From positions 16,120,001 through 16,184,000 of the forward strand of contig OZ059896.1 in assembly GCA_964057225.1 (NCBI GenBank): a stretch of DNA of 64,000 bases, read 5' to 3'. Each line of letters begins with the position of its first letter. Within the stretch, counting starts at the first letter, position 1. The notes beneath the pieces were generated by a model. That model did not search any database. It was given only the letters and a program-made list of their open reading frames with translations, and had not been told where the DNA came from. Positions 23,248 through 27,174 of the stretch are shown here, in pieces. Both the position numbers and the translations under genes were made by a program. The DNA comes from Auanema rhodensis (lineage: Eukaryota; Animalia; Nematoda).

Positions 23248-25979
23248 TTAATTAAAATATCCATAACCATTTGATGGGGGTACCGGAGCAAAACCTTGAG
23301 GTGGATAAGCGCCACCCTTAAAAAACCGATAAAGCTTCAAAGAAAACTTTTACCTACCATTGCATGTAGTGGAGCAGATCCATTCGGCCTAGAAGCTATG
23401 GGAATCGTCAAAGTTAGAGCTTCTGGAAACAAATCATGATAGGAATTCACGGGAACGTAATTTGCAGTGATAATCTGAAACATCATAATGAGTAAACGTA
23501 TATTAATGAAAATAAATAGGTAAAATAAACCAAAAAACTCTTACTTTTCCACTGAACCATCTTCCATGAAGAGCTGAGACACTCCTGTGAGCAATAACAA
23601 CAGAGGGGCATTTAACATAAACATTTCCCTGAGCACTGGCTTTATCTACATACACATGAAGTGCTCCTCCATTTTTGGCACACTCTTCGATAACATCCTG
23701 AAATACGCATATAAACAAAGAGGAATTCGAATAGCAATGTTATACCTGTCTAACATCATCTTCCCATGATGGTTCTACTTCCTTCGCAGGATCAAACATA
23801 TTGGAAAGCATAAAGCACTGGGTGGCAATAGAAGGGATAGTTGGGTCATGTTGCTGTGCTTGTTGTGTTTGAAGCGCTTGCTGGGCTTGATGAGGTAACT
23901 CAATTCCAGTTCCTTGAGCTAATTTTGCCATTAACTGTAATCGCCCACTTTGTCCACCGAGAGAAATGCCTTGCTTATCTTCGATAACGTCGTCTAAGCT
24001 CCTCTGTTTAGCTGACTCATCTTCCTTAAAACAAAATATTTGTTACAACGCAAATTAAATTATAACTTACGTCATCAACTATGCTGACACGAATATTGTT
24101 TCCTGCTAGTTCCAAGCCATTCAACTGTTCTGCAGCTTTAGTGCCATCTTCAGTCTTGGTAAACTACAAAAATCAAGTATTAAAAAAAAGTAACAAGAAT
24201 AACTAACCGTTACATATCCAACTCCAACTCCAGTGGCATCTTTACGAATTTTACAGTTTTGAATACGACCGAAAGGCTCGAAAATAGGTTCCAGCATGCT
24301 CTCGTTAATATTTGGGTGCAAGTTCGAAATTTGCAACTTGCAAGGTCCTTTGCTATTAGCCGGGCCAAATCCTAAGGCAGACCCAACTGTAGCAGTGGCA
24401 TTGGCAGCGCGATTACGCTCGGCGCAAGTTCTTTGAATAACCAACGGAGCTCCTGTAAGACAATTAATAAAAAATAATAAATATAAAACGAATGCTACCG
24501 AGCAGTTTCTGGCCATTTAGAGCTAATCCAAGGGAGACACTTTCTTCTTCCCAGAACTCAACATAAGCAATACCCTAAACAATATAAGTAAAAATGAAAA
24601 ATAGAATAGAGTACCTTTGATCTTCCAGTTCTAGAATCTGTAATAATACGGACATCTCTGACTGCACCAACTGAACTGAAAAACTCTTCAAGATCCCGAG
24701 GTCTTGTTTGTCTTGCAATCTAATATAATATGGTTAGGAAATAAATAAATTTACGAAAAAATAACCTGTAATATGAATAATGTTCTGTGATCTCTTTCTT
24801 CTGAAGACAGATCAGTTCTAGCACCTTTTGGAGGTGACGTACGAGCCGTAAATGGCATAACATCTCGACGCTCAGGACCTGGCAAACGTCCTAAAAGGGA
24901 TAAATTAGTAAAATAAAATAATTGAAATACTGAGTACTGACTTATAGGAGATCTTCTGTCACGGTGATCAATTACACGCGGTCTATCACGGGGATGTCTG
25001 TGCCTACGATCACGAGAACGGGATCTGAAATAGTTGAATTATATAAATATAAATATTTTTATTTAATACCTGGAACGTCTGTTATATGTTGGTCGTCGAT
25101 CACGACTGCGGCTTCTTCGTCTTTCGCGACTACGACTTCTTTTTCGGTCTCGGCTTTTACTACGGCGATCACGAGAGCGTGAACGCTTCTTACGGTCTCT
25201 AGATGAGCTTCTTCGGCGATCTCTGCTGGAACTACGTCTACGTTTTTTGCGATCCTCGCTGGGGGATCTGAAACAAAATAGTTAGAACAATTTTCTTCTG
25301 CTCTTTAGAAAATTTTCATTAAAAAAAAACAAAAATAAAACAAGTTGAATCTTCTAATGCTGACCAATAAGGACAACTCCATTGAACAACGCTTCGTGCC
25401 ATAAGCCTGCAACAAAGGCCCGCGACTTTTCTTCATTTTATTATTTCATTTGACAATTATTAAAACTGTTCGAAATGAAGAAAAGTCGCGTTCATGGCCT
25501 TGCAAGGACACGAGCGTACCTCGAGACGCTTCTTCAGACGACATCAGCAGAAAAGGAAGAACAGTGGAACAGCGCTTGTACAAAGGCTCTCGTTTAAAGG
25601 TCTACAACGACGAGCAGGTCTTACAAATGTGAAAAAAAAGTTCAAGATTTGCTTTTGAGAAACTTGATTAGATAATATTTTGAAATAAAGATGAATATTA
25701 CATTAATATTATACAACTTACCGACTACGATTTCGTCGTCCATCATCCTTATTCTCTTTAGAGTCCTGAAACATATTAGTATACTTTAGATTAACTGTTT
25801 CATATTTATATTTTTTATTGTCAATGTAATACATTCTGATTTGTTTTAATCGAAGATCTTCGAAACACCAAAAAAACCATCACCTCCATGATTCTAAAAT
25901 GAATATTAAATCAACTAACCACCTCTTCCGCCTTTTTCGGGTCTAGAGCATCTTCAAGAAGAGCATCGACGTCATCCAT
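23248..25979 (-). CDS. rbm-39: Splicing factor RBM39/CAPER (RS domain, 2 RRMs, UHM)
   Basis: MDDVDALLE, RS repeats, ERDHRTLFILQIARQTRPRDLEEFFSSVG, RLQLMAKLAQGTG, IATQCFMLSNMFDP, ALHGRWFSGK. Confidence 0.95.
25520..25619 (-). other. Candidate poison (PTC-containing) cassette exon in rbm-39 intron 2
   Basis: Acceptors TTTGTAAG| and TTGTAG| and donor GAG|GTACGC at 25519. In the frame of exon 2 it reads RPARRCRPLNESLCTSAVPLFFLFC* (TGA). Confidence 0.6.
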
Positions 25980-27174
25980 GCTGGAAAACTATAAGCCTTT
26001 GAATATCTTCACAACCTCGATCACAATAGTTTCTTCGAAATCGAAAAGGAAAAGTAGCTTGCCCGCGAGCGTGTGATAACGTATTCGAAATGGCACCGTT
26101 TCGAGACCAAATACTTTTTAGTAATAGAGCGCGCTTCAAACAAAAATAATGCTGTTGCCTCATAAACCACAAAGTGAAAATAAAATTATTATTAACCGAA
26201 ATAAGTTAATTAGTTAATAGTGCTTTTAAATTAACAAAGCAAATGGAAATAAAATATTGCAAATAATCTTATAAGTAACTATGAAAAATTTATCTGTTTA
26301 AATTTATTATTTTCAAATTTTTATACAGAAAAGAAAGTTGTGAATAAAACTTGTATTTGACATTTTAAATGATTTCTCTTCCGATCCAGTCATAAAAACT
26401 GAAATATAACATCTTCCTGGTTGTTTGAAAAGCACAACAGACATATATGATTGTGAATCACTCTGTTCGACTTACAGGTCTACAATTTACTAGGTAGAGC
26501 TCGAAGCTGAAATTGAAAGAAATAATTGACTCAAATTGGTTATATTGCTTTGAAGCGAAATATATTGCTTCGAAACTCAACATATGTTAACTGAATCGGT
26601 GAAATTACTGATTTTTTCTTTTACTTTCCTAATTTTATATCAACATTAGCCCAGAGTGGTTGCTTTCCCAGTCAGGTTAGTTTACATTTCCTTTCCTTTA
26701 TGATTGCGAGAACAAAGTTTGTGCCCCGAATCATCTAAATCCAAACTATGAATGCATCGATTTTTTTAATTCTTTACCATTGATTTAAGTTTCAATAAGA
26801 TTTTTCTTCGTATTTTTATGGACTGTTATCACCAACTTACATTAATATATTGATTGCACTATCTGCTTATCCATAACTATCTTAAAAGACTCAGTAGTAT
26901 GACAACATATTTCAAAATATGATTTATTAATTGAAAAGTCTTAAATACATTCGCCTAAATAGCAGCCTTTGTTGAGCATATTGCTAAAAATTTTTTTAGA
27001 TTCAAATAAAAATTTTGTATACTGTCGCAATTCATTTGTCAGCCACGCAATTATACGTACTCCAAATGTTTTTTTAATATTTTTTTTCTATATATGCTTA
27101 TAAAGTTAATTTCTAATGTTTATACCGTACTTTATTGATGTGTAAATAAGAGTAAACACTATGTTTAGGGTAAA

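What the first reader, a model, noticed from the sequence alone, without database searches (positions are those of the whole stretch)
25360..25625. Hairpin-gated poison-exon cassette in rbm-39 intron 2: candidate RNA-structure autoregulatory switch
Seen: intron 2 is ~450 nt, against ~45 nt for most neighbouring introns, and is GC-enriched. It holds a cassette exon (25619 or 25601 to 25520) with an in-frame TGA, then a GT..AG unit (25519-25407). That unit contains a perfect 18-bp inverted repeat (CGCGACTTTTCTTCATTT 25421-25438 / AAATGAAGAAAAGTCGCG 25473-25490). The stem extends through AGGCC/GGCCT, TGCA/TGCA and CGC(T)TCGTG/CACGAGCG, so it overlaps both the 5' donor region and the next 3' acceptor. 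Known: human RBM39 autoregulates through a poison exon near its 5' end, and its RRM1 binds stem-loops. Inference: a structure-dependent NMD feedback cassette in a nematode. Alternatively, the hairpin intron could be a mirtron or ADAR substrate.
Basis: partly seen in the sequence, partly recalled or inferred. Interest (0 to 1): 0.78.

Follow-up and report, generated by a model that had tools for sequence, protein, structure and literature searches.

The report
RNA clamp on rbm-39 poison exon
A stop-carrying extra exon in the second intron of this worm's RBM39 splicing-factor gene is used in real transcripts, and the splice signal at its end sits inside a long RNA double helix that is kept, with matching changes on both strands, in hookworm relatives and Pristionchus, so it is very probably a dosage-control device that works through RNA shape.

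Summary
The minus-strand RBM39 orthologue has a 454-nt intron 2 (25721-25268). It contains a perfect 18-bp inverted repeat, extended into a hairpin of about 45 bp (-56.8 kcal/mol, z -6), and the repeat is single-copy in the genome.

Spliced RNA contigs from four runs of one study join exon 2 to an acceptor at 25601 in all four. This gives an in-frame TGA at 25546-25544. The donor at 25519 is used in one run and joins directly to exon 3. In all four runs, contigs show the hairpin segment retained. The acceptors at 25619 and 25407 were not seen.

Comparison gives the new result. Six strongylid parasites and Pristionchus pacificus share four features:
- the acceptor block (TCGTTGTAG|AC);
- an 83-101-nt stop- or frameshift-carrying exon;
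- a GTAYGC donor;
- a duplex starting at +2 to +4 of that donor.

In strongylids the duplex closes a loop of about 450 nt (34 nt here). It has 54 pairs, 97% of cells paired, and six pairs with compensatory double changes. C. briggsae keeps only the acceptor block.

Best reading: a conserved unproductive-splicing (AS-NMD) module whose poison-exon donor is clamped by RNA structure. It is analogous to, but built differently from, human RBM39 exon 2b/SLi. Feedback by RBM-39 itself is inferred, not shown. The mirtron and repeat readings are rejected.

The parts
25920..25979 (-). Exon 1, coding part (ATG at 25979); the 5' UTR reaches at least 26048
   Evidence: Joint 25764|25919 and contig 25919-26048; sequence
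25722..25765 (-). Exon 2 (44 nt); it ends two bases into a codon, so intron 2 is phase 2
   Evidence: Joints; sequence
25268..25721 (-). Intron 2 (454 nt), removed whole in the productive mRNA
   Evidence: Joint 25267|25722 in runs X1, X2 and X4
25600..25623 (-). Conserved block around the alternative 3' splice site (...GCTCGTCGTTGTAG|AC); the AG is at 25603-25602
   Evidence: 22/24 identical to A. duodenale and N. brasiliensis. Core TCG.T.TAGAC is invariant in 9 species including P. pacificus and C. briggsae
25520..25601 (-). Poison exon, 82 nt (shifts the frame and carries a stop)
   Evidence: Joint 25601|25722 in 4/4 runs and joint 25267|25520 in X4; translation
25544..25546 (-). In-frame TGA, codon 19 of the poison exon reading
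25514..25519 (-). Poison-exon donor, GAG|GUACGC
   Evidence: Joint 25267|25520. GUAYGC is kept in all 8 species. Predicted P(unpaired) for +3..+8 is at most 0.10, and at most 0.03 for +4..+8 (compare)
25496..25517 (-). 5' strand of the outer helix H1, starting at +3/+4 of the donor
   Evidence: MFE fold; RNAalifold helix at columns 15-39/627-652, kept in all 7 aligned species
25473..25490 (-). 5' arm of the perfect 18-bp inner stem, preceded by the 5-nt bulge AUGAA at 25495-25491
   Evidence: strongylids have a 5'-side bulge at the same place
25439..25472 (-). Apical loop of 34 nt (about 450 nt in strongylids, measured between the H3 strands)
25421..25438 (-). 3' arm of the inner stem
25384..25420 (-). 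3' strand of H1. It contains the 3'-splice-site-like UUGUUGCAG|GCU (AG at 25408-25407), whose use was not seen
   Evidence: 27/32 identical to A. duodenale. TTGTTGCAGG is invariant in 7 species and P. pacificus has UUCCAG|GCU at the equivalent place. No joint at 25407
25268..25519 (-). Segment retained in the commoner unproductive form (exon 2 joined to 25601, then unbroken into exon 3)
   Evidence: Contigs 25239-25601 (X1, X2) and 25070-25601 (X3); contig 25256-25490 (X4) covers only part of the segment
25070..25267 (-). Exon 3, start of the Arg/Ser-rich domain
   Evidence: Joints; sequence

Best explanation
Intron 2 of this nematode's RBM39 orthologue (rbm-39) holds a conserved unproductive-splicing module.

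Exon 2 can be joined either to exon 3, which gives the productive mRNA, or to a weak, deeply conserved upstream acceptor at 25601. Using 25601 brings in an 82-nt exon with a stop codon. Two such stop-carrying mRNAs are seen. In one the exon is a cassette (donor 25519 joined to exon 3). In the other, which appears in more of the runs here, the 252 nt after it are retained. Both should be removed by nonsense-mediated decay or give no full-length protein, so the choice of acceptor sets RBM-39 output.

The donor of the poison exon is built into the base of a long RNA duplex. The duplex runs from +3/+4 of the donor to a strand about 120-140 nt upstream of exon 3. Once the distal strand is transcribed, the duplex hides the donor from U1. 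This weakens definition of the poison exon and favours either skipping (productive) or retention of the downstream segment. Opening or stabilising the duplex, by RBM-39 or another factor, would then shift the balance.

Shown here: the splice junctions, the stop codon, the fold, and conservation and covariation of the duplex.
Inferred: NMD of the isoforms, the direction of the structural effect, and feedback by RBM-39 itself.
For: - RNA: spliced contigs of four runs show joints 25601|25722 (4/4), 25267|25520 (1/4) and 25267|25722 (3/4), plus unbroken contigs from 25601 into exon 3 in three runs and a partial one in the fourth.
- Stop: TGA is in frame.
- Fold: -56.8 kcal/mol, z -6.06. Predicted accessibility of donor +1..+6 falls from 0.56 to 0.05 when the distal strand is added.
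- Not a repeat; no Rfam family.
- Orthologues: six strongylids have the same acceptor block, an 85-101-nt exon giving a premature stop, a GTAYGC donor and the two complementary strands about 480-550 nt apart.
- RNAalifold, run without prior input, predicts 54 long-range pairs in three helices, starting at +4 of the donor.
- Covariation: 97% of cells are paired and 6 pairs show double changes, against 32-38% paired and 0-2 double changes when the partner is slid by 1-3 columns. Many G-U pairs fit only the sense strand.
- P. pacificus has the acceptor block, an 83-nt stop-carrying exon, the identical GAG|GTACGC donor, and a hairpin of unrelated sequence (-69.1 kcal/mol, z -3.4) that starts at +2 of the donor.
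- Donor +5..+8 is predicted paired in all 8 species, apart from +7 in A. duodenale at 0.43.
- Literature: the C. elegans rbm-39 (Y55F3AM.3) cassette exon is the first-listed event among the top NMD-sensitive changes in smg-1 and smg-2 mutants (PMC2265522 Table 2). Human RBM39 autoregulates through poison exon 2b, whose 5' splice site is held in an inhibitory stem (PMC10477243).
Against: - Both unproductive forms carry the same stop whether or not the clamped donor is used. Donor masking therefore changes the productive/unproductive ratio only if poison-exon definition feeds back on acceptor choice, and nematode short introns are usually thought to be intron-defined.
- C. briggsae keeps the acceptor block, but its intron 2 is not structured (z +1.7) and lacks the donor and strand motifs. 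The duplex is therefore not indispensable for the module.
- All RNA evidence comes from assembled contigs of one study. Contigs cannot give ratios and can miss rare junctions.
- Nothing here tests NMD, RBM-39 binding or in-vivo pairing.
- The human RRM2 site N(G/U)NUUUG is not present next to the conserved acceptor AG.
- Both strands of part of H1 are invariant, including a 3'-splice-site-like CAG|GCU. This suggests a further sequence-specific role that this model does not explain.
Confidence: 0.6

Rival explanations
1. RNA bridge. The duplex does not mainly hide the donor. It loops out the intervening sequence (34 to about 450 nt) and brings the poison-exon donor close to the exon 3 acceptor. 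This promotes removal of the downstream intron and hence the clean cassette form.
For: The distance from the distal strand to exon 3 is nearly constant (CAG|G to exon 3 is 125-145 nt in seven species) while the loop varies more than tenfold. Long-range complementary boxes that act by looping are known for other poison exons (PMC10789245, listed).
Against: The helix includes donor positions +3/+4 onward in every species, and pairing there is normally inhibitory. In the window species, where the helix is tightest, the donor junction was seen in only one of four runs and the segment is otherwise retained.
Confidence: 0.17
2. Acceptor mask. The main task of the duplex is to bury the conserved, strong-looking internal acceptor UUGUUGCAG|GCU (25407), so that exon 2 reaches the true exon 3 acceptor. 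The donor is paired only as the partner strand.
For: TTGTTGCAGG is invariant in seven species and P. pacificus keeps UUCCAG|GCU at the equivalent place in otherwise unrelated sequence. Use of that acceptor would also give a premature stop (my reading). No joint at 25407 was seen, as expected if it is masked.
Against: The element kept in every lineage is the pairing of the donor, GUAYGC with GCG(U). The acceptor-like motif could be conserved simply as the complement of a constrained 5' strand. No transcript evidence shows that it ever functions.
Confidence: 0.13
3. The double-stranded region is a substrate for dsRNA enzymes. It could be a (tailed) mirtron or Dicer substrate, or an ADAR editing target, and that processing rather than splice-site access is its function.
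For: There is a perfect 18-bp stem within a duplex of about 45 bp. Weak sub-threshold resemblance to plant miRNA precursor models.
Against: The Rfam hits are far below gathering score (25.7 against 100). No 25519-25407 junction was seen. The stem extends 22 nt past the AG. The homologous strongylid structure encloses about 450 nt, which does not fit a pre-miRNA. No variant letters appear over the duplex.
Confidence: 0.05
4. The inverted repeat is an incidental leftover, such as a transposon terminal repeat or a recent inverted duplication, with no function.
For: Perfect arms can indicate recent origin.
Against: It is single-copy in the genome. The outer helix is shared with strongylids. Compensatory double changes occur and slid controls fail. 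An equivalent hairpin of unrelated sequence is present in P. pacificus.
Confidence: 0.02

Closest known systems
Human RBM39 poison exon 2b with inhibitory stem-loop SLi (Campagne et al. 2023, PMC10477243)
   Same: It is the orthologous protein. A stop-carrying alternative exon lies near the 5' end of the gene, before the RS domain. The exon has a weak acceptor, and its 5' splice site is held in an inhibitory RNA stem.
   Different: Human SLi is a small local stem between an exonic ACCUUUG and the donor. Here the partner is an intronic strand 100 to about 570 nt downstream, forming 45-54 bp. The human RRM2 site CUCUUUG next to the AG has no counterpart at the conserved nematode acceptor. Homology of the intron position was not tested, and RBM-39 dependence was not tested.
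C. elegans rbm-39 (Y55F3AM.3) NMD-sensitive cassette exon (Barberan-Soler and Zahler 2008, PMC2265522; exon 3 regulated by mec-8, PMC3025544)
   Same: Same gene family in a nematode. An alternative cassette near the 5' end changes its level strongly in smg-1 and smg-2 mutants. The Caenorhabditis intron keeps the acceptor block found here (shown in C. briggsae).
   Different: It was reported only as a row in microarray tables, scored 'no PTC, multiple of 3', with no structure described. C. briggsae intron 2 shows no significant fold. I could not obtain the C. elegans genomic locus.
Conserved intronic structures controlling poison exons in other genes (SF3B3 stem-loop hiding branch sites, PMC11162794; BRD2/BRD3 complementary boxes, PMC10789245)
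   Same: Conserved RNA pairing next to a poison exon tunes unproductive splicing of a regulator gene.
   Different: Those structures hide branch sites or bridge the exon flanks in vertebrates and flies. This one clamps the poison exon's donor in nematodes. The SF3B3 paper states that nematodes lack that poison exon.
Mirtrons
   Same: A hairpin lies between a GU and an AG inside a host intron.
   Different: The splice sites do not coincide with the hairpin ends. The junction is not observed. Homologues have loops of about 450 nt.

Membership tests
Poison exon / AS-NMD unit | Alternative splice junctions present in RNA | tested here: met
   Joints 25601|25722 (4/4 runs) and 25267|25520 (1/4 runs)
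Poison exon / AS-NMD unit | Inclusion introduces a premature stop or a frameshift | tested here: met
   TGA 25546-25544 is in frame and the 82-nt exon shifts the frame. The same holds for all seven orthologous exons
Poison exon / AS-NMD unit | The stop-carrying isoform is stabilised when NMD is blocked | not testable with these tools
   Lead only: the C. elegans Y55F3AM.3 cassette changes more than 4-fold in smg-1 (-2.39) and about 3.5-fold in smg-2 (-1.81) (PMC2265522)
Poison exon / AS-NMD unit | Splice sites conserved beyond neutral expectation | tested here: met
   Acceptor block conserved in 9 species (shuffles); donor GTAYGC in 8 species
Human-type RBM39 autoregulation (exon 2b) | Inclusion depends on RBM39 protein | not testable with these tools
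   Needs knock-down or CLIP
Human-type RBM39 autoregulation (exon 2b) | RRM2 motif N(G/U)NUUUG immediately upstream of the poison-exon AG | tested here: not met
   The conserved sequence is UCGUCGUUGU-AG. The ACAUUUG about 20 nt upstream in the window is absent from strongylids
Human-type RBM39 autoregulation (exon 2b) | Inhibitory stem involving the poison exon's 5' splice site | tested here: met
   (prediction plus covariation, different architecture)
Human-type RBM39 autoregulation (exon 2b) | Same intron position as in vertebrates (common descent) | not tested
Conserved long-range intronic RNA duplex | Two complementary boxes conserved in orthologous introns | tested here: met
Conserved long-range intronic RNA duplex | Compensatory changes exceeding controls | tested here: met
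   8 pairs by RNAalifold. 6 double-change pairs and 97% paired, against 0-2 and 32-38% in slid controls; 0/1000 shuffles reach the observed pairing
Conserved long-range intronic RNA duplex | Pairing demonstrated in vivo | not testable with these tools
   Needs DMS/SHAPE-MaP or a proximity-ligation method
Mirtron | Hairpin ends coincide with a used GU...AG pair; pre-miRNA size conserved | tested here: not met
   No 25519-25407 joint. The stem runs past the AG. Strongylid loops are about 450 nt
Transposon-derived inverted repeat | Multiple related copies in the genome | tested here: not met

The most novel reading that the evidence does not exclude
The duplex is the sensor of an ancient RBM39 feedback loop. 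On this reading, nematode RBM-39 recognises the clamped donor helix, as human RRM1 recognises stem-loops, and/or the UNGUUG-YAG motifs shared by the poison acceptor and the buried CAG|GCU. It thereby switches exon 2 to the poison acceptor. Structure-dependent self-limitation of RBM39 would then predate the split of nematodes and vertebrates, rather than having arisen twice.
Probability: 0.15. Interest if true: 0.8.

Novelty: new variant of a known kind. Interest (0 to 1): 0.62.

Why it matters
RBM39 is an essential splicing factor and a cancer drug target, and its self-limitation through a poison exon was worked out only in human cells. The same gene in clade V nematodes carries a poison exon whose donor is clamped by an RNA duplex. 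That duplex has been maintained by compensatory evolution in lineages as far apart as Pristionchus, an Auanema-like free-living worm, and hookworms, Haemonchus and lungworms.

This gives three things. First, it is a clear, testable case of RNA structure controlling unproductive splicing in nematodes, where few such structures are known. Second, genetically tractable species such as P. pacificus can be used to test it with compensatory mutations. Third, nature offers its own experiment: a 34-nt loop against one of about 450 nt, and apparent loss of the structure in Caenorhabditis. These differences bear on how loop length and co-transcriptional folding set splice-site choice.

Tried and rejected
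- Repeat or MITE origin: rejected.
- Known RNA family: none. Only sub-threshold plant miRNA hits.
- Mirtron: rejected on anatomy and on the homologues.
- Word search with a single exon returned only fragments at 60% identity or less. This established family membership (PF15519) but gave no usable loci. The representative search was then needed to reach full-length orthologues.
- No gene record was available for the Auanema (P0182), Necator (P0168) or H. contortus (P0179) proteins. The closest relative, Auanema at 87% protein identity, could therefore not be compared. The C. elegans look-up gave only a transcript contig.
- A metagenome scan with the 17-nt acceptor block gave 120 chance matches, none with the second block.
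- C. briggsae intron 2 has no significant fold and no donor or strand motifs.
- A script with co-fold shuffles timed out and one stopped on a pattern error. Both were replaced.
- The alternative pairing of the poison exon's 3' end with the inner 5' arm (I3/D3) was not found in strongylids on inspection. I treat it as lineage-specific.
- Earlier notes of this scan list other candidate poison exons in this genome, but nothing further on this gene.
Full report
**What is in the sequence**

The gene lies on the minus strand. Spliced contigs and the sequence fix its 5' part:
- exon 1, with the ATG at 25979 and ending at 25920;
- intron 1, 25919-25766;
- exon 2, 25765-25722;
- intron 2, 25721-25268 (454 nt);
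- exon 3, 25267-25070, which starts the Arg/Ser-rich domain.

Ten further introns are 40-70 nt. The protein is an RBM39 orthologue. Single-exon searches hit proteins carrying the RBM39 linker domain PF15519 and RRMs. Over four exons it is 87% identical to Auanema sp. JU1783, 70-71% to strongylids and about 62% to Caenorhabditis. The window therefore comes from an Auanema-like clade V (rhabditine) nematode.

**Check of the observation**

- The inverted repeat 25421-25438 / 25473-25490 is perfect, 18 nt, with a 34-nt spacer.
- The arm occurs twice in the window against 0.07 expected.
- It has only six 2-mismatch hits elsewhere in the 181-Mb genome, fewer than the reversed control. The 251-nt block matches only itself. 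It is not a repeat family.
- GC is raised over the block. No Rfam family reaches threshold.

**Transcripts**

Four runs of one study hold the locus as assembled contigs. These contigs skip thirteen GT..AG introns exactly, so they derive from RNA.
- The productive joint 25267|25722 is present in three runs.
- The joint 25601|25722 is present in all four.
- From there the frame runs into TGA at 25546-25544.
- In X1, X2 and X3 the contig continues unbroken from 25601 into exon 3, so the hairpin is retained in the RNA. X4 has a partial contig over the same segment (25256-25490).
- In X4 a contig joins 25520 to 25267, giving a true 82-nt cassette whose donor is GAG|GUACGC at 25519.
- No contig uses an acceptor at 25619 or at 25407. 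Contigs drop rare forms, so this is not proof of absence.
- The hairpin is thus not seen as a separate GT..AG unit.

**Comparative evidence, which decides the matter**

I fetched the orthologous genes of the following species:
- Ancylostoma duodenale;
- Nippostrongylus brasiliensis;
- Parelaphostrongylus tenuis;
- Ostertagia ostertagi;
- Haemonchus placei;
- Angiostrongylus costaricensis;
- Pristionchus pacificus;
- Caenorhabditis briggsae.

In all six strongylids, the intron before the RS exon contains two blocks collinear with the window: the acceptor block (22/24 identical...GCTCGTCGTTGTAG|AC) and the distal strand (27/32 identical, GGCC.TTGTTGCAGGCT...). Between them lie an 85-101-nt exon and a GTAYGC donor. 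In phase-2 reading, each of these exons gives either an internal stop or a frameshift with a stop four codons into exon 3.

**Structure in the strongylids**

RNAalifold was run on the MAFFT alignment of the seven regions with no structure supplied. It predicts 54 long-range pairs in three helices:
- H1 starts at +4 of the poison-exon donor and is kept in all seven species.
- H2 and H3 are further in.
- The loop they enclose is about 450 nt in strongylids.

Eight pairs show compensatory double changes. My own count over the six strongylids gives 97% of cells paired and six double-change pairs. With the partner slid by 1-3 columns, 32-38% are paired and there are 0-2 double changes. None of 1000 column shuffles reaches the observed pairing. 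Many invariant G-U pairs would be A-C mismatches on the other strand, so it is the sense transcript that folds.

In the window species H1 and the 5'-side bulge are kept. H2 and H3 are replaced by the perfect 18-bp stem and the loop has shrunk to 34 nt. The distance from the distal strand to exon 3 stays at 125-145 nt throughout.

**Pristionchus and Caenorhabditis**

P. pacificus has the acceptor block (TCGTTGTAG|AC), an 83-nt exon with a stop and the identical donor GAG|GTACGC. These are followed by a hairpin of unrelated sequence (-69.1 kcal/mol, z -3.4) whose stem starts at +2 of the donor. Its 3' strand again carries a YAG|GCU motif. This is independent support for selection on pairing of the donor.

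C. briggsae keeps the acceptor block (0/300 shuffles; alignment). Its intron 2 is not structured (z +1.7), and neither strand motif is detectable.

Partition-function folding from the poison exon through to exon 3 gives P(unpaired) of 0.1 or less for donor +5..+8 in all eight species, apart from +7 in A. duodenale at 0.43. In the window, accessibility of +1..+6 drops from 0.56 to 0.05 when the distal strand is added.

**Mechanism**

Shown:
- a conserved weak acceptor that yields stop-carrying mRNAs;
- a conserved donor embedded in a selected duplex.

Inferred:
- these mRNAs are NMD targets;
- the duplex limits U1 access to the donor, and so limits definition of the poison exon.

Retention of the downstream segment, where the helix is tightest, fits donor masking.

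There are weaknesses. Both unproductive forms carry the same stop, so masking matters for protein output only if exon definition influences acceptor choice. Caenorhabditis appears to manage without the duplex. The invariant CAG|GCU in the distal strand hints at an additional role, perhaps a masked acceptor or a protein site.

Rivals are a looping bridge, an acceptor mask and dsRNA processing. An incidental repeat is excluded.

**Relation to what is known**

- Human RBM39 limits itself through poison exon 2b. Inclusion there needs an RRM2 site at the acceptor and is damped by a small stem (SLi) that pairs an exonic motif with the exon's own donor. RRM1 binds stem-loops (PMC10477243). The vertebrate exon is conserved as far as fish (PMC3176834).
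- In C. elegans a Y55F3AM.3 cassette is the first-listed event among the top NMD-sensitive changes in smg-1 and smg-2 (PMC2265522) and is mec-8-regulated (PMC3025544). No structure was described.
- Structures controlling poison exons are known for SF3B3 and BRD2/3.
- I found no paper describing a nematode rbm-39 structure.

The finding is therefore a new variant of a known kind. The logic matches human RBM39, but the architecture differs: a long intronic duplex of 45-54 bp, with no RRM2-type site at the acceptor.

**Limits**

- RNA evidence is from contigs of one study.
- The closest relative (Auanema) and the C. elegans genomic DNA could not be obtained.
- Eight species are too few for a formal covariation statistic.

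Noticed in passing
window 25522-25536 versus 25476-25490 and 25421-25435: The last 15 nt of the poison exon are an 80% direct copy of the inner 3' arm (D3), so they can pair with the inner 5' arm (I3). This alternative hairpin would enclose the donor before the true 3' arm is transcribed. Predicted donor accessibility already drops at that stage. I did not see the same arrangement in strongylids.
   Followed up: partly
window 25580-25592 and 25412-25424: There are two copies of G(A/G)GCCUUUGU, one inside the poison exon and one in the distal strand just before the buried CAG (D4). They resemble the human exonic site ACCUUUG (BS2). Strongylids have GCCAUUGU in the distal strand.
   Followed up: partly
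L135:1-404 (C. elegans transcript contig): The contig encoding the annotated 435-aa 'short isoform' starts with about 30 nt of non-exon-1/2 sequence spliced onto exon 3. It has a 133-aa ORF (RS region) overlapping the 435-aa ORF out of frame. The short isoform may therefore be read from an alternative or unproductive transcript that begins at the Met after the RS domain. The window protein has a Met at the same place (exon 5).
   Followed up: no
L010:5853-5915 and the equivalent in L012, L134, L136, L137, L138: A third conserved strongylid block lies just downstream of the distal strand (CATGGAAAACCCC..GAGGA..GAGGATATTTATGGACA). It is only faintly recognisable in the window (about 25382-25345). 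Its function is unknown.
   Followed up: no
L010 and the other strongylid loci, about 19-25 nt upstream of the poison acceptor: Five of the six strongylids have TACTAAG upstream of the conserved acceptor (O. ostertagi has AACTAAG and H. placei TACTTAG). This is close to the classic branch-point consensus UACUAAC, which nematode introns usually lack. The window has TGTAAG there.
   Followed up: no
L011:3100-3330 (C. briggsae intron after the first RS exon): A run of tandem repeats of about 22-23 nt (…aaaatcgctatttcaagctc…) fills a 765-nt intron. It looks like an intronic minisatellite.
   Followed up: no
window 25766-25919: Intron 1 (154 nt) is also about three times longer than the gene's other introns, and very AT-rich (GC about 0.21-0.26).
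   Followed up: no
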